This document shows, piece by piece, positions 46,402 to 56,691 of a stretch of 64,000 bases of DNA. The translations under genes and the position numbers were made by a program. Position 1 is the first letter of the stretch. Each line of letters opens with the position of its first letter. This stretch comes from Octopus sinensis (taxonomy: Eukaryota): NCBI RefSeq assembly GCF_006345805.1, contig NC_043014.1:8246001-8310000 (forward strand). The letters run 5' to 3'. Below the pieces are notes generated by a model. That model ran no database searches, was not told the DNA's origin, and was given only the letters and a program-made list of their open reading frames with translations.

Positions 46402-49400
46402 ATGGATAGTACGGACCAGAATGCATCAGTCGAATGGCCACCTATATTGAACTTTGTAAACAATACTGCAGGTACAAAGGAACTCCCTTTTCTTGCAAAT
46501 GGGAACTCAAGCATGTCTGCAATTACAGACATTACAGCTTCAAAGAAATATACCTGTAACTATTGTTCAAAATCATTCTCTCGCAACGGCCACTTGGTGA
46601 TGCACCGTCGTATTCACACAGGTGAACGCCCTTACGTTTGCCAACAGTGTCACAAAGCCTTCACTCAGTCCAGTGCTCTCTATCGCCATATGAAAATCTG
46701 TACTAAAGTGCCAAACAAAGATAGCCTGGAGTTATCAGCTAACGTGAAAATGCTAGAGACTTCTATTGCGGCAGCAGAAAAGCAGTATGCAATGCTATCT
46801 GCTTCAGAAAGTGCGTTTACATCACTCGGAACACTTTCAAATGATAATACTGAAACAAATGATGACATAATGTTTGTTTGTTGTAATAAAACATTTAGAG
46901 ATTCTTCTGATTACAATGAGCACATAGCTGGTCACAATGACCCGTCTCAATCTGAATTATTGAGCCTGTTACCAAACAACCACAGCCAAGTCGATGGTAT
47001 GATGAAGGACGTTACTACTATCAATAAAATAGGAAAGAAACAAAACCAGTTCCATAATAAGACAAACACATCTATAAATGGTAAAAAGCAGTCGTCAACC
47101 AAAGAAAATTTGAATATGTTGTCAAGTTCTGAGTCGCAGTATCAAATAATTGTTCGTGATAATCCGCCGGAGGTGACAAAAGATGGTCTTGACCAAAACA
47201 AGATCACCATCAATCTAACTGATAACCATATGGAATCTCCAAAGAACAACTTATGCTTTTCTCAAGCAAATAACCAACATGATCCCATATTTGATCCAAT
47301 AACAATTGAACTAACTGACCAATCTCAAGATAGCACGTATGTCTGGGATAAAAATAATATGTCACCTGGTAACAGTTCTAATAAACAGTTAAAAATCGAC
47401 CATTCTCAGTTATCAGACATTGATAGTTTGGCTGAAAATCTCAGACTGTTGCGGGAGAAAACCGATGCAATTACCAAAAAAACATTACCAAAAGACTGCT
47501 CTAGCGATACATCCATTGGTATTTTTACTTCACAAGATTCTCTGTCTTCAGATCAGTTGCTTGCTTGTAACGGGGACAAATCTTGGAAGGACTCATCTAA
47601 TTCTTTCTCAACTCAAATTCTGCCAAATAATGATTTGACAAGTAGTAAACATTTCAACCAATTATCTCATCAAAGTGACAATGAAAAAATTGCCGAAAAT
47701 GCTAACAAAGTTCAAAAAAATATAAATTCCAAGTTAAAATCTTCTGTGAAAAGCAAAATTCACCAACACTTAACTTGCCAGTTCTGCTCCCGCCAATTCA
47801 CACGTACTAGCCGTTTGACCCAGCATTTGCGTACGCATACAGGAGAAAGACCCTTTAAATGTGATTTTTGTGGTAATTCATTTACACAATCAAGTGCACT
47901 TAATCGCCATCTAAAGACATGCAGTGTTGCCCAAAGCATTAATTCGAATATTCAGTGGGACACCACTGCACAATATCACCTTACCTCTGACTTAACCCTT
48001 GGCAGTGACATTTCTTTCACGTGTCAGTTCTGTGGTGACAATTTTCAACAAGTGTCTAAATATGACAGCCACTCAAAAGTGTGTCCAGCAGCACATAAAA
48101 GTCAATTAAAGCCTAATGAAGATGTTGTGCATGATGACTTTGATATAGTTAATGATCACACTGATTCAACCAAGAACAGCTTTGTAAAAACTCCATCCCC
48201 CCTACTAAAAAATGCTTCAACTTCCATGATTAAAAGTAAGACACAAAGTTTCAAAGCTTCTATACCTGAGTCTAGACAAGTAAAACGTAGGAAAAAAAGT
48301 TTTAATACAAAAAATGATAGAACCTATCAGTGTAGCATTTGTTTAGTTGAGTTTGTATCATATCCTCACCTTAAAGTCCATATAAAGAAACACCTTCGGG
48401 TTAATACTTTATCAAAGACTTCTCAGTTGCAGAGTCGGAATTCTTCAACCAGTAATTTAATGCGATCTTTTTCAGCAAGAAACAAACACATCACAAGATC
48501 TAAAACTTCAACTAAAAAATCCCCTAGTAAGTCTTTAAATCATAGAGAGTTCTTAAACAAAGTTAATTCGCTGATAATGAAAAAGAACTCTTCACATTCA
48601 ACCAGTAACTCTGAGTTTCAAACTGAGCATCCATTGACCAACTCTAACACTTGCAAATCAAATATTTCTCTGTTACCTGATAAAACTAGCAAGATATCAG
48701 AATCCCTTGACACCAAAGGAAAACCTACTGTTGCAATGGTTAACAAAGGAAATGTTTTTAACACACGCAGTGGTGTTGAAACCAAATCCAATTCGTCAAC
48801 TACTTTTGTTTGTGATATTTGTTCCAAGCCTTTCCATTCCTCCATTGTGTATCAGATTCACAAAGCTTCACATTCCAGTGAGTCTAAAAAAACCTCCCAT
48901 TCTCAAATAGACTCCAATGCCAACAAATCCATTCATAATGAAGACGTCAACATTTTAGAGCAAAGAGATCTTGTTAGTTCTAATTCGCGTGTTGCTGTGG
49001 AGACTGTAAATGAATTTGACATTCAGCGCAAAAGTTTCCCTTGCAGTTATTGCCCCAAGGAATTCTTCAAACAATCTCATCTGGAAACACACATCCGAGT
49101 ACACACAGGGGAGAAACCGTTCCAGTGTGAGAGTTGTGGTCGTGCCTTTTCACAGTCAAGTGCTCGAAACAGACACACCAAAACTTGCTTACGAGTCAGA
49201 TACCCAGAGTTAAATGTCTCCATTAAAACCACTGGAAATGCCGTTAGTGGAATGGAGCGTTCTGAAGTAATTAACTTGGACAGTAAAATCAGAGAGGACA
49301 GTCTTGATCCTGACAATTTCACTTTTACCTGCTGTGGCCAAGTCTTCAGTAGCAGCAAAGAGCTGCGGAATCATGTTGAGTGCCACAGAAAAGGCAAAGA

Positions 49401-55400: not shown

Positions 55401-56691
55401 AGCTGAAAATCCTGATTTAGAACCAGAATATCTTAGTAATGTCTCTAAAAAAACTGTTAACTTACTTGATGAAGAAACTAGTAGAACAGTGTCTGCTTTC
55501 ACAAAGGAGAAGGAAGGCAGGCATAAGAAAACATCTTTAACAACAACTAGCAATAAAATCAACCGCAAAAGGTTGCATACAGGGATTGGTAGCAGACTGA
55601 TGAAAAAACTGAAGCTGTCAAAACGAGGAAAGCTTCACTCAAGTTATGATTTTAATAGTGACTTGAATTGCCTTTCAAGAAGACAAGCGATTAATTCTTT
55701 GTTAGATGATCACCATAGTTTAAAGGAAAGAAGCAAAAGTCTTTTAACGGATACGGCACCTTCTGTTAACAACCCAACAAGCTTTCCTCAAAGGAGTTGC
55801 AAGAAAAAACAGTTGACCAAAACCCCTAGTGCGAAACCATGTACAGATTCAGAACGAAACAATAGAGCTTGCAGTCTTGAAGTTACAGAAGTGTCACCTC
55901 CTAAGAGGGTCAAAGAGGAGACCCAGTCTAATGCTAATGAGCTGTCTGAAGGATTTCCCCGCTGTGAAGAATGTAAAAACAATTCAAAAGAATTGTGCTC
56001 ACACTTGACAGAAAATCTATTTCTTTCCCCAGTGGATTCCGAAACAGATGATTGTTACATTAAAACTGAACCTCTTCCTTCTTCTATACCTAAATCTTTA
56101 GATTCAGAAACAAATCCTCTTAATCTTACTATTTTACAATCAAAAGCTTCAGCCAATGATGAAAGTGTTGACCTTACAAATGAAAGCATGAAAAATTCTC
56201 TAAAAGGAGAAATTGTTCAAGATGGTGGATACTTACAAGAGGAAATGGCTCTCACAAATTGCCCAGAGAGTACAGAGGGAACACATGATCAGCTAGAGAG
56301 TAATATTGCACAAGAAGACAGTAAGAGCCTTAAGTCTGTTCCATCTGCAGCTGCACATTGTGTCTCTAAAAAGTCTAAGGTTGTTAAAAGAGGCAGCAAA
56401 GTTGTCCAAGACGACACTTTCTCGCCTCAGTCAGACTCTTCGCATTCGGCTGAAAGCCGTCGTTACTTTTGTGAATACTGTGATAAAGCCTTCTCGCGGT
56501 TTGGACATCTGGTTACCCATCGCCGCACGCACACCGGCGAACGACCTTACCAATGCCGTTACTGCCAGCGAGCATTCACGCAAACTAGTGCCCTTTACAG
56601 ACACAGAAAAACATGCAGTTTCACTCCTGCACATCTTAAAACTATAGCAGCAACTGAAAGCAGTAAAGCTGCTAAAAGTAATGAGTTGTGA
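46402..56691 (+). CDS. Giant single-exon multi-zinc-finger protein (3429 aa) with eight dispersed C2H2+C2HC pairs
   Basis: 10,290-nt ORF free of stops and TEs; ATG in cacatcATGG context. TGERP/TGEKP-linked 153-nt finger pairs at 46549, 47770, 49036, 52003, 53413, 55018 and 56464, plus a diverged pair at 50944. Orphan C2H2/C2HC fingers and S/N-rich linkers lie between them. No orthologue recognised. Confidence 0.95.

What the first reader, a model, noticed from the sequence alone, without database searches (positions are those of the whole stretch)
46402..56691. 3429-aa single-exon zinc-finger protein built from eight widely spaced C2H2+C2HC modules
Seen: eight 51-aa pairs of exactly 153 nt start at 46549, 47770, 49036, 50944, 52003, 53413, 55018 and 56464. 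They are 350-640 aa apart in S/N/T-rich linkers, and the second finger always ends H-x3-C. Established: the cephalopod C2H2 expansion is known mainly for tandem poly-finger arrays, and dispersed-pair proteins such as Spalt, Schnurri/HIVEP and RREB1 mostly use H-x3-H pairs with other helices. Inference: an internally duplicated multivalent DNA-binding scaffold, possibly a looping or bridging factor.
Basis: partly seen in the sequence, partly recalled or inferred. Interest (0 to 1): 0.75.

Follow-up and report, generated by a model that had tools for sequence, protein, structure and literature searches.

The report
Giant octopus zinc-finger protein, eight pairs
This is a real, conserved but unstudied octopus gene for a 3,429-residue protein with eight near-identical two-finger DNA-reading units on long floppy linkers; I found it only in Octopus and two unnamed, probably cephalopod, assemblies, and the general design has precedents.

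Summary
Window 46402-56691 (+) is one uninterrupted 3,429-codon ORF. It carries eight 51-aa C2H2 + C2HC (H-x3-C) finger pairs at exactly the stated coordinates.

The window is Octopus sinensis LOC115221598, annotated as uncharacterised. It is single-copy. dN/dS against another octopod is 0.31 overall, 0.09 in the pairs and 0.34 elsewhere. Collinear orthologues exist in O. bimaculoides, O. vulgaris and two unnamed assemblies that are about 30% identical. Nothing related turned up outside this family in a 1.84-billion-protein profile search.

Seven of the eight pairs share the same base-contacting residues and a TGE[RK]P linker, and they match DNA-bound Krüppel fingers. The linkers are S/N/K/T-rich and predicted disordered. 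The best reading is a nuclear, homotypically multivalent DNA binder; looping or bridging is untested.

It is not unique. Fish ZNF1035 also has dispersed C2H2+C2HC pairs, and a second 3,442-codon octopus ORF has dispersed homotypic pairs. It is a new variant of a known kind, of moderate interest.

The parts
46402..56691 (+). Complete 3429-codon ORF (ATG to TGA). This is Octopus sinensis LOC115221598 isoform X1. An in-frame stop lies 6 codons upstream, at 46381-46383.
   Evidence: dN/dS 0.31 against the octopod orthologue L013
46106..46125 (+). Polypyrimidine tract followed by CAG, a possible splice acceptor of the coding exon. If used, the 5'UTR within this exon is about 276 nt. It is conserved in L013.
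   Evidence: read from the sequence only, usage not shown
46300..46472 (+). Alternative 173-nt intron (GTAAGT...CAG) implied by the O. vulgaris model CAI9737359, which starts at ATG 46233. It would replace the first 24 residues only.
   Evidence: The MDSTD... N-terminus is 23/24 conserved in L013, whereas the upstream ATG is absent there.
46549..46701 (+). Pair module 1 (aa 50-100). Contact residues F1 RNGHLVM, linker TGERPYV, F2 QSSALYR, ends H-x3-C.
46873..46935 (+). 'CC'-type variant finger [21 protein letters not shown] (aa 158-178)
   Evidence: 0 matches in 2000 shuffles
47770..47922 (+). Pair module 2 (aa 457-507). RTSRLTQ / TGERPFK / QSSALNR.
48016..48084 (+). Lone C2HC finger [23 protein letters not shown] (aa 539-561), at the position where other units carry the CC finger
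48325..48393 (+). Lone C2H2 finger (aa 642-664), conserved in the distant orthologues. It is preceded by the basic cluster KRRKK at about aa 630-634.
48805..48873 (+). Lone C2H2 finger (aa 802-824)
49036..49188 (+). Pair module 3 (aa 879-929). KQSHLET / TGEKPFQ / QSSARNR.
49324..49386 (+). 'CC'-type finger [21 protein letters not shown] (aa 975-995). AlphaFold gives a beta-beta-alpha fold at pLDDT 68-80.
49726..49755 (+). 30 nt ([10 protein letters not shown], aa 1109-1118) that are absent from O. sinensis isoform X2 and from O. bimaculoides. The segment is not bounded by GT...AG, so it is more likely an indel than an intron.
50476..50544 (+). Lone C2HC finger (aa 1359-1381). It is the surviving second finger of a ninth pair that is intact in the two distant orthologues.
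   Evidence: pLDDT 73-75
50944..51096 (+). Pair module 4 (aa 1515-1565), degenerate but conserved. SLMLLEE / TNKKHYV / SSSKFEQ.
51721..51783 (+). 'CC'-type finger [21 protein letters not shown] (aa 1774-1794). It is preceded by a Cys, giving C-x4-C.
52003..52155 (+). Pair module 5 (aa 1868-1918). RSGHLMQ / TGERPYS / QTSALNR.
52384..52452 (+). Lone C2HC finger (aa 1995-2017) inside the most conserved non-pair block, [22 protein letters not shown]
52627..52695 (+). Lone C2H2 finger (aa 2076-2098). It is preceded by an invariant I-K-x-E (a SUMO-consensus-like motif) at aa 2067-2070.
52870..52932 (+). 'CC'-type finger [21 protein letters not shown] (aa 2157-2177). The stretch [10 protein letters not shown] is invariant in all four orthologues aligned.
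53413..53565 (+). Pair module 6 (aa 2338-2388). RSGHLIM / TGERPFR / QSSALNR. AlphaFold gives two beta-beta-alpha fingers at pLDDT 72-80.
53653..53907 (+). Cluster of a CC-type finger (aa 2418-2438), a decayed finger YICDCC... (aa 2441-2464) and a lone C2H2 finger (aa 2479-2502)
55018..55170 (+). Pair module 7 (aa 2873-2923). RSSHLKM / TGERPFK / QASALNR.
56464..56616 (+). Pair module 8 (aa 3355-3405). RFGHLVT / TGERPYQ / QTSALYR. It lies 24 residues before the C-terminus and is the most conserved pair (84% to the distant orthologues).

Best explanation
This is a single-copy, protein-coding gene, Octopus sinensis LOC115221598. The family was found only in Octopus species and two unnamed, probably decapodiform, cephalopod assemblies.

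The protein was built by internal duplication of one unit: a canonical C2H2 finger, a TGERP linker and a C2HC (H-x3-C) finger, usually followed 80-110 residues later by a variant lone finger. The ancestor had nine such units. Octopus keeps eight and half of the ninth.

Seven units keep the same DNA-contact residues. Finger 1 reads R(-1), H(3) and a module-specific residue at position 6. Finger 2 reads Q(-1), A(3), R(6). Each unit should therefore read the same, or nearly the same, roughly 6-bp site weakly on its own. By the canonical recognition code that site is roughly 5'-GNA-NGG-3', which is an inference.

The units sit on 300-600-residue S/N/K/T-rich linkers that are predicted to be disordered. 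The whole protein would then bind by avidity wherever several copies of the motif lie within reach, whether as clustered sites or on different DNA segments. The linkers carry a few conserved short motifs and lone fingers that probably recruit partners.

Shown here: the ORF, its selection, conservation and copy number; the module anatomy; and the fold and family of the fingers.

Inferred: DNA binding, the shared motif, nuclear localisation, avidity and any bridging.
For: Real gene under selection:
- dN/dS against an 84%-identical octopod orthologue is 0.31 overall, 0.09 in the eight pairs and 0.34 in the rest, with dS 0.24.
- Only one copy of linker 5-6 exists in the genome.
- Orthologues are collinear over their full length. 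This exact sequence is itself on record in NCBI, on the same O. sinensis contig as isoform X2 (LOC115221598). The others are O. bimaculoides XP_014782524 at 93%, O. vulgaris CAI9737359, an octopod at 84%, and two assemblies at about 30%.

Modules are the conserved islands:
- They are 66-84% identical to the distant orthologues, against 29% for the whole protein.
- Each octopus module groups with the module at the same position in the distant orthologues, mostly with strong support. The array is therefore old and does not evolve in concert.

Internal duplication:
- The six best hits genome-wide to module 5 lie inside this ORF at 65-100% identity. The next best, at 62% or less, are H-x3-H fingers.
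- All eight terminal ligands are Cys (TGY). Changing Cys to His needs two base changes (genetic code).

DNA-binding type:
- Pfam zf-C2H2 scores 235 bits and zf-H2C2_2 155 bits over 8 stretches.
- The best PDB sequence and fold matches are DNA-bound ZNF568, Aart, CTCF, PRDM9 and ZBTB7A.
- The contact residues are conserved between modules and between lineages.
- CTCF shows that a C2HC finger can close a DNA-binding array (PMC10094706).
- Widely separated finger pairs with intrinsic DNA-binding specificity are established for Schnurri/HIVEP (PMC10853822, which cites Fan & Maniatis 1990).

Disordered tethers:
- Linker composition is given.
- AlphaFold on linker 3-4 gives mean pLDDT 36, with 512 of 585 residues below 50. 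Only the CC finger, the remnant finger and one short helix rise above that.
Against: - No binding, localisation or expression data exist, and I found no paper on the gene.
- Two fingers alone give low affinity and specificity. The predicted motif rests on a generic recognition code, with Ala at position 3 of finger 2.
- Module 4 has lost DNA-type residues yet is conserved, so at least one unit does something else.
- C2HC fingers in FOG/U-shaped and in plant IDD proteins are said to mediate protein contacts (from memory). Pfam's plant IDD C2HC model just passes its cut-off, 29.3 against 27 bits.
- The AlphaFold runs used only 4 sequences. Low pLDDT in the linkers is therefore weak evidence of disorder on its own.
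- The two distant orthologues come from unnamed assemblies, so 'coleoid-wide' is an inference.
Confidence: 0.55

Rival explanations
1. The protein is a protein- or RNA-binding scaffold rather than a DNA binder. On this view the C2HC fingers, as in FOG/U-shaped or IDD ZF4, and the many lone variant fingers dock partner proteins. The protein would then be a hub for complexes and not sequence-specific on DNA.
For: - Thirteen lone or variant fingers are conserved across the family, as is the degenerate module 4.
- Pfam PF22995 (IDD C2HC finger) scores 29.3 bits over 4 stretches.
- Lone C2H2 fingers can dimerise (PMC12774644).
Against: - The C2HC finger here is always joined by a TGE[RK]P linker to a canonical finger, and it keeps Q(-1)/R(6). 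That is the signature of tandem DNA-reading fingers.
- The closest solved relatives are all DNA complexes.
- FOG-type C2HC fingers are isolated, not TGEKP-linked (from memory).
Confidence: 0.2
2. The protein is a transposon-silencing zinc-finger gene of the lineage-specific cephalopod C2H2 expansion, analogous to the KRAB-ZNF arms race.
For: - The octopus genome holds very many C2H2 loci: more than 33,000 first-look candidates for a single 51-aa pair.
- The window is full of SINE-like repeats and microsatellites.
Against: - The gene is single-copy.
- Orthologues are one-to-one and collinear, with position-by-position module orthology.
- Contact residues are nearly frozen, with dN/dS 0.09 in the modules.
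- There is no tandem gene cluster here and no repressor domain by Pfam.
- Arms-race ZNFs instead show rapid turnover and diversifying contact residues (established knowledge).
Confidence: 0.1
3. The protein is a diverged orthologue of a known bilaterian dispersed-finger protein, such as vertebrate ZNF1035, ZNF236 (the name given in the O. vulgaris annotation), Schnurri/HIVEP, Sall or RREB1.
For: - ZNF1035 proteins have 5-6 dispersed C2H2+C2HC(H-x3-C) pairs and recur among the hits.
- RREB1 and Sal-like proteins appear as weak hits.
Against: - Similarity to ZNF1035 is confined to the fingers: 23% over gapped stretches and 35-45% within single pairs. There is no collinearity.
- ZNF1035 pairs form their own clade, and their second fingers have a different helix, R-x-D-Y-L-K-x-H.
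- RREB1 and Sall hits cover 2-3% of the query.
- A profile of the best-conserved non-pair region finds only the family itself among 1.84e9 representatives.
Confidence: 0.08
4. The ORF is not a functional gene. It would be a chance ORF, a pseudogene or an assembly artefact.
For: None found.
Against: - The frame is open for 3435 codons in 37% G+C DNA.
- The same frame is open in five independent assemblies.
- dN/dS is well below 1 in every linker.
Confidence: 0.01

Closest known systems
Vertebrate 'zinc finger protein 1035' (fish; P0013 Polyodon, P0069 Brachyistius, and unnamed relatives P0018 and P0022)
   Same: These are large proteins (2100-2800 aa) with 5-6 dispersed two-finger units made of C2H2, an HTGEKP-type linker and C2HC ending H-x3-C, plus lone C2HC fingers. 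The family is uncharacterised: it gets a single GWAS mention in the literature searched.
   Different: The pairs are only about 90-180 aa apart and sit next to ordinary finger clusters. The second-finger helix is different. There is no collinear or linker similarity, and the pairs form a separate clade in the module tree. Orthology is not supported.
Schnurri / HIVEP (PRDII-BF1, MBP-1)
   Same: These are giant, mostly disordered proteins with widely separated two-finger units that each have intrinsic DNA-binding specificity. The separated units are reported to recognise the same sequence (PMC10853822; title of Fan & Maniatis 1990).
   Different: They have two conserved pairs, not eight or nine. 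Both fingers are C2H2 (from memory). No sequence relationship was detected in any search here.
Basonuclin / Drosophila disconnected
   Same: [quoted passage not shown]
   Different: They have three pairs, a different finger sequence, and are much smaller. They were not recovered in any search.
Second giant octopus ORF, G000:C11 ~22.592-22.602 Mb (3442 codons), with relatives P0024 and P0025
   Same: It is in the same genome, is also a single open frame of about 3.4 kaa, and has at least 6 widely spaced homotypic two-finger units on long linkers.
   Different: Both fingers end in His (helices ...STASNMREH / AQSSTHSKH). The family is different, and there is no similarity outside the fingers.
CTCF zinc finger 11
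   Same: A C2HC finger closes a DNA-binding C2H2 array (PMC10094706). CTCF is among the best sequence and fold matches.
   Different: CTCF is one contiguous 11-finger array, not dispersed pairs.
FOG / U-shaped and plant BIRD/IDD C2HC fingers
   Same: They are classical beta-beta-alpha fingers in which the last His is replaced by Cys. Pfam PF22995 gives a marginal hit.
   Different: Those fingers mediate protein contacts, or sit in a fixed four-finger array (from memory). Here the C2HC finger is always the TGERP-linked partner of a canonical finger.

Membership tests
Krüppel-type C2H2 zinc-finger proteins (Pfam PF00096 / PF13465) | C-x2-C-x12-H-x3-H fingers scoring above the Pfam gathering cut-off | tested here: met
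   PF00096 scores 235.2 bits (cut-off 25.2) over 17 stretches. PF13465 scores 154.9 bits over 8 stretches.
Krüppel-type C2H2 zinc-finger proteins (Pfam PF00096 / PF13465) | TGEKP-type linker joining consecutive fingers | tested here: met
   TGE[RK]P[FY] is present in 7 of 8 pairs. Pair 4 has TNKKHY instead.
Krüppel-type C2H2 zinc-finger proteins (Pfam PF00096 / PF13465) | Sequence-specific DNA binding | not testable with these tools
   Only inferred, from contact residues and from the closest solved structures.
Vertebrate ZNF1035 | Collinear similarity beyond individual fingers, i.e. orthology | tested here: not met
   BLASTP alignments are anchored on fingers and gapped, at 23% identity. The linker profile finds no ZNF1035.
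Vertebrate ZNF1035 | Dispersed C2H2+C2HC(H-x3-C) pairs | tested here: met
   There are 8 here, against 6 in P0013 and 5 each in P0018 and P0022. The pairs fall in separate clades.
Cephalopod lineage-specific C2H2 expansion (tandem clusters of poly-finger genes) | Many recent paralogues, tandem gene arrays and contiguous finger arrays | tested here: not met
   Linker 5-6 is single-copy. There is no other ZNF ORF in the 64-kb window. The fingers are dispersed rather than contiguous.
Schnurri/HIVEP, Sall, RREB1, ZNF236 | Detectable full-length or domain-order similarity | tested here: not met
   RREB1 and Sal-like hits cover 2-3% of the query. HIVEP was never recovered. The 'finger 236' label is only an automatic name on the O. 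vulgaris record.
FOG/U-shaped-type protein-binding C2HC fingers | Isolated C2HC fingers that bind GATA factors | not testable with these tools
   The architecture differs, because the fingers here are linked to a C2H2 finger. No binding data exist.
Plant BIRD/IDD C2HC finger (PF22995) | Third finger of a fixed ZF1-ZF4 array in plant IDD proteins | tested here: inconclusive
   The model just passes, 29.3 bits against a cut-off of 27, over 4 stretches. The four-finger IDD array is absent. The match reflects the C2HC pattern, not membership.

The most novel reading that the evidence does not exclude
The gene encodes a cephalopod-restricted architectural chromatin protein. Seven or eight two-finger units of identical specificity, on tethers hundreds of residues long, would gather many copies of one short motif, for instance in a dispersed repeat, a satellite or clustered regulatory sites. 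They would hold these copies together, acting like the multivalent chromocentre bundlers (Drosophila D1/Prod, HMGA1) or like loop-anchoring finger proteins.

Together with at least one other octopus giant of the same layout (C11, 3442 codons), it would define a 'beads-on-a-string' class of homotypic multivalent zinc-finger proteins. That class might be relevant to the unusual genome organisation of coleoids.
Probability: 0.15. Interest if true: 0.75.

Novelty: new variant of a known kind. Interest (0 to 1): 0.45.

Why it matters
If the modules really read one shared motif, this protein is a natural example of extreme homotypic multivalency in a sequence-specific DNA binder: eight or nine identical readers on disordered tethers. 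The arrangement has been kept position-for-position between lineages that differ at 70% of their residues. That makes it a clean system for asking how avidity, tether length and site clustering set genomic targeting, and a candidate architectural factor in cephalopod genomes.

It also shows that the cephalopod zinc-finger repertoire contains old, single-copy, strongly constrained giants as well as the young tandem expansions usually discussed. If the modules do not bind DNA, it is simply one more uncharacterised large zinc-finger protein.

Tried and rejected
(1) A word-based search scored on module 6 alone gave only 6 candidates, all poly-finger proteins or the family itself. It says nothing about distant relatives.

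(2) The third homologue search, with the distant orthologue P0004 as query, found no named squid or cuttlefish protein. The taxa of L011 (ENA ERZ21867824) and L012 (SRA ERR12921340) therefore stay unverified. A literature search for these accessions and for both LOC numbers found nothing.

(3) I hoped the roughly 10.9-kb Logan contigs were full-length transcripts. L013 begins in a SINE-like repeat, carries the sequence upstream of the putative splice acceptor, and ends at the microsatellite after the stop codon. It is best read as genomic, and gives no evidence on splicing.

(4) Self-BLASTP with the eight pairs masked found no further internal repeat at E<1. The idea that the ancestral unit was 'pair + third finger' rests only on motif positions.

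(5) P0035, the best non-family hit of the profile search (E=1.7e-7), is a repetitive, artefact-like sequence whose ordinary fingers matched the CC-finger region. I rejected it.

(6) The Dipteran 'CGxPhi' dimerising finger (PMC12774644) looked similar to CCGQ[VM]F. In that family the motif lies in an extra strand before the finger and is Diptera-specific, so it serves only as a precedent for lone-finger dimerisation.

(7) Pfam on four other ORFs in the window gave nothing.

(8) I did not scan the genome for the predicted hexamer. GNANGG is too degenerate for enrichment to mean anything.

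
Full report

Yes. Window 46402-56691 (+) is a 3429-codon ORF from ATG to stop. The stop-to-stop frame is 3435 codons, with an in-frame stop six codons before the ATG. It is the only long ORF in the window. The next longest frames, up to 396 aa, are translated microsatellites and repeats. In DNA of about 37% G+C, such a frame cannot arise by chance.

A regex scan finds the eight units at aa 50, 457, 879, 1515, 1868, 2338, 2873 and 3355. Each unit is C-x2-C-x12-H-x3-H, seven residues, then C-x2-C-x12-H-x3-C. 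These positions correspond to nt 46549, 47770, 49036, 50944, 52003, 53413, 55018 and 56464, each 153 nt long, exactly as reported. All eight second fingers end in Cys, with codons TGT or TGC. Start-to-start spacing is 353-636 aa. The linkers are 15% Ser, 9% Asn, 8% Lys and 7% Thr.

**2.

- The protein has many more fingers than the sixteen in the pairs.
  - There are seven lone C2H2 or C2HC fingers, at aa 539, 642, 802, 1359, 1995, 2076 and 2479.
  - There is one decayed finger at aa 2441.
  - There are five copies of an odd motif, F-x-C-C-[GN]-x-x-F...H-x3-H, at aa 158, 975, 1774, 2157 and 2418. This motif never occurs in 2000 shuffles of the protein. It is conserved in the distant orthologues, where [10 protein letters not shown] is invariant. 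AlphaFold models it as a beta-hairpin plus helix, at pLDDT 51-61 in one run and 68-80 in the other.
  - In six of the units a third finger follows the pair. It lies about 80-130 residues after the pair start for pairs 1, 2, 3, 5 and 6, and about 260 for pair 4. The original repeat may therefore have been 'pair plus third finger'. Apart from this positional pattern I could not show that.
- Pair 4 is degenerate. Its linker is TNKKHY, its helices are SLMLLEE and SSSKFEQ, and it is only 27-39% identical to the other pairs, which are 51-73% identical to each other. It is nevertheless conserved.
- The two distant orthologues have a ninth pair between pairs 3 and 4. Octopus keeps only its C2HC half, at aa 1359-1381.

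**3. Identity of the gene**

The translated ORF is itself in the public protein collection. It lies on the same 55,351,117-bp contig as XP_036366586.1, 'uncharacterized protein LOC115221598 isoform X2 [Octopus sinensis]'. The window is therefore O. sinensis and the ORF is isoform X1.

Isoform X2 lacks ten residues (nt 49726-49755). O. bimaculoides lacks the same ten. The segment is not bounded by GT...AG, so I read it as an indel rather than an intron.

The orthologues are:

| Orthologue | Identity to the window | Length |
|---|---|---|
| O. bimaculoides XP_014782524 | 93% | 3429 aa |
| O. vulgaris CAI9737359, auto-named 'finger 236' | not measured here (same 90%-identity cluster) | 3428 aa |
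| an unnamed octopod contig, L013 | 84% | 3418 aa |
| unnamed assembly L011 (ENA ERZ21867824) | about 30% | 3286 aa |
| unnamed assembly L012 (SRA ERR12921340) | about 30% | 3257 aa |

L011 and L012 are 64% identical to each other. From their divergence I take them for decapodiform coleoids, but I could not verify this.

The O. vulgaris model uses an upstream ATG (46233) and a 173-nt intron (46300-46472, GTAAGT...CAG). The MDSTD... start is better conserved among octopods, and the upstream ATG is missing in L013. Either way, all modules lie in one exon. A polypyrimidine-CAG at 46106-46125 may be the acceptor of this exon, so untranslated upstream exons are possible.

**4. Selection and conservation**

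dN/dS against L013 (dS 0.24) is 0.31 for the whole ORF, 0.09 for the eight pairs and 0.34 for the rest. Every linker lies between 0.15 and 0.38.

Against the distant orthologues the protein is 29% identical overall. The pairs are 66-84% identical and stand out as islands. Smaller islands are a few lone fingers and several short motifs:
- [14 protein letters not shown]
- PNVTLTLGS
- YSPETPPF
- [22 protein letters not shown]
- YSKSRQNKQ
- [13 protein letters not shown]
- an invariant I-K-x-E at aa 2067-2070

In a tree of the 51-aa units, each octopus pair groups with the pair at the same position in the distant orthologues, mostly with strong support. The array was therefore complete before these lineages split and has not been homogenised since.

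The gene is single-copy: linker 5-6 finds only itself in the 2.7-Gb genome.

**5. Relatives elsewhere**

- Two word-indexed searches of 5.8 billion proteins, with the octopus protein and with the distant orthologue as queries, found four clusters of true relatives. Everything else aligned over 1-26% of the query, through fingers only.
- The exhaustive profile search used the best-conserved non-pair region (linker 5-6, 418 positions, four sequences) so that poly-finger proteins could not swamp it. Among 1.84 billion representatives it found the family itself at E<1e-170. Everything else had E of 1e-7 or worse. The top non-family hit is a repetitive artefact, and the rest are weak finger matches.
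- No orthologue of a characterised bilaterian protein was found. This is limited by which mollusc proteomes the libraries hold.

**6. Is the module type or the layout unique?**

No.

- Fish 'zinc finger protein 1035' (P0013, P0069) and its unnamed relatives (P0018, P0022) contain five or six dispersed C2H2+C2HC units ending H-x3-C, about 90-180 residues apart. Similarity to the octopus protein is confined to the fingers. The second-finger helix differs, and the units form a separate clade. I treat this as the same kind of module, not the same family. ZNF1035 is itself unstudied.
- Within the octopus genome, a 3442-codon ORF on contig C11 carries at least six widely spaced homotypic pairs of a different type, with both fingers ending in His. 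It has relatives in other assemblies (P0024, P0025).
- O. vulgaris 'finger 236-like' (P0017) carries dispersed homotypic triples.
- The top hits lie in open frames of 3442, 3259, 2785, 2545, 2526, 2424, 2334, 2229 and 2122 codons. Giant single-ORF, beads-on-a-string zinc-finger genes are thus a recurring design in this genome. This one is the case with the most regular array and the only one found with C2HC pairs.

**7. How it most likely works**

Shown:
- The pairs are canonical Krüppel fingers by Pfam.
- Their best solved relatives are DNA complexes of ZNF568, Aart, CTCF, PRDM9 and ZBTB7A.
- AlphaFold folds the pair as two beta-beta-alpha units at pLDDT 72-80.
- Seven pairs have a TGE[RK]P[FY] linker and nearly the same residues at helix positions -1, 2, 3 and 6. 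Finger 1 has R/K, G/S, H (R in pair 2), then a module-specific M, Q or T. Finger 2 has Q, S, A, R. These residues are also conserved between lineages, including the module-specific position 6.

Inferred:
- By the canonical recognition code (established knowledge: R(-1) reads a 3' G, H(3) a middle G or A, Q(-1) a 3' A, R(6) a 5' G), each pair would read something like 5'-GNA-NGG-3'. Only one base would vary between modules.
- Two fingers bind weakly, so eight on one chain would bind by avidity where motifs cluster. With tethers of 300-585 residues they could also span distant sites.
- The tethers are probably disordered. The evidence is their composition and AlphaFold on linker 3-4, with mean pLDDT 36 and 512 of 585 residues below 50. 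That run had a shallow alignment, so it is weak evidence by itself.
- Basic clusters (KRRKK near aa 630, and RKR...[10 protein letters not shown] near aa 3058-3080) are NLS-like.
- The terminal Cys is best seen as a frozen ancestral state. Cys to His needs two base changes through a non-ligand intermediate. A last finger has no following linker to constrain it, and CTCF likewise ends in a C2HC finger (PMC10094706).
- Precedent for separated pairs that each bind DNA comes from Schnurri/HIVEP (PMC10853822).
- Module 4, the lone fingers and the short linker motifs most likely recruit partners. Lone C2H2 fingers can dimerise (PMC12774644).

**8. Rivals**

- A pure protein or RNA scaffold is possible but fits the TGERP-linked, contact-residue-conserving pairs poorly.
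- A transposon-silencing arms-race gene is contradicted by single copy, one-to-one collinear orthology and frozen contact residues.
- Orthology to ZNF1035, ZNF236, HIVEP, Sall or RREB1 is not supported.
- A non-functional ORF is excluded.

**9. Verdict**

Internal duplication and a multivalent DNA-binding design are the best reading, but looping or bridging is untested, and the claimed uniqueness of the H-x3-C pair and of the layout does not hold.

The gene is already annotated but uncharacterised. I found no paper on it. I class it as a new variant of a known kind, namely large proteins with widely separated finger pairs, of moderate interest.

Noticed in passing
G000:C11:22592487-22602065 (outside the window): This is a second giant open frame (3442 codons) in the same genome. 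It has at least six widely spaced homotypic two-finger units of another type, with both fingers ending in His and helices like STxxNMxEH / AQSSTHSKH. Relatives P0024 (3113 aa) and P0025 occur in other assemblies. The same 'beads-on-a-string' layout therefore evolved, or was kept, at least twice.
   Followed up: partly
G000, several contigs: C27:13458672, C4:75545040, C2:100962833, C11976:7916, C5:99531412, C18:25485923, C1:11258810, C16:15563442: There are many further zinc-finger open frames of 2100-3300 codons without stops. Those I read (L007-L010) have dispersed clusters of 3-6 canonical fingers. Giant single-ORF zinc-finger genes appear to be common in this genome.
   Followed up: partly
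window 46873-46935, 49324-49386, 51721-51783, 52870-52932, 53653-53715: A conserved variant finger has two adjacent cysteines (F-x-C-C-[GN]-x-x-F...H-x3-H). Only two of the five copies have an upstream Cys that would restore a C-x4-C knuckle. How, or whether, the others bind zinc is unclear. In one distant orthologue the first copy reads CCDC, a normal C-x2-C.
   Followed up: partly
window 56705-56993 and 57526-57739: An (AT)145 microsatellite starts 14 nt after the stop codon, and a 26-nt TG/TA-rich repeat follows. Public contigs of the orthologue end at this point, which probably explains their uniform length of about 10.9 kb.
   Followed up: partly
window 23385-24450; 27077-27515; 33033-33280: Three long microsatellites are present: (ACAT)268, (GAA)147 and (GATA)62. 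The first two produce the long pseudo-ORFs listed in all frames.
   Followed up: no
window 310-1177, 8890-9291, 11062-11791, 36520-36975, 38584-38964, 39687-40186; tandem 184-186-nt units at 24958-25329 and 37823-38193: Many copies of SINE-like elements lie on both strands. Their frame translations share strings such as ...RPQDLFF.SLVLILS.SFAEPLSYG.... One such element also forms the 5' end of the orthologous contig L013 and matches window 44161-44288.
   Followed up: no
window 21194-21772 (+) and 28632-29306 (+): Two ORFs of 192 and 224 aa share a pattern (...LE[YF].......P.......LE.VQR.ATR/K...L.YEERL..L.L.SLE/L.RR...DL...). To my eye it resembles the C-terminal part of LINE reverse transcriptases. 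Pfam gave no hit.
   Followed up: partly
window 46233-46472: The O. vulgaris annotation of the orthologue uses an upstream ATG and a 173-nt intron with consensus GTAAGT and CAG sites. The NCBI models use ATG 46402. The true 5' structure is unresolved.
   Followed up: partly
window 2128-2342, 8452-8718, 40654-40842, 42985-43124: Short tandem arrays have 62-137-nt units sharing a core like GTGCC.GTGGCAC.TAAAAAGCACC. The units look tRNA-like or SINE-head-like and recur across the window on both strands.
   Followed up: no
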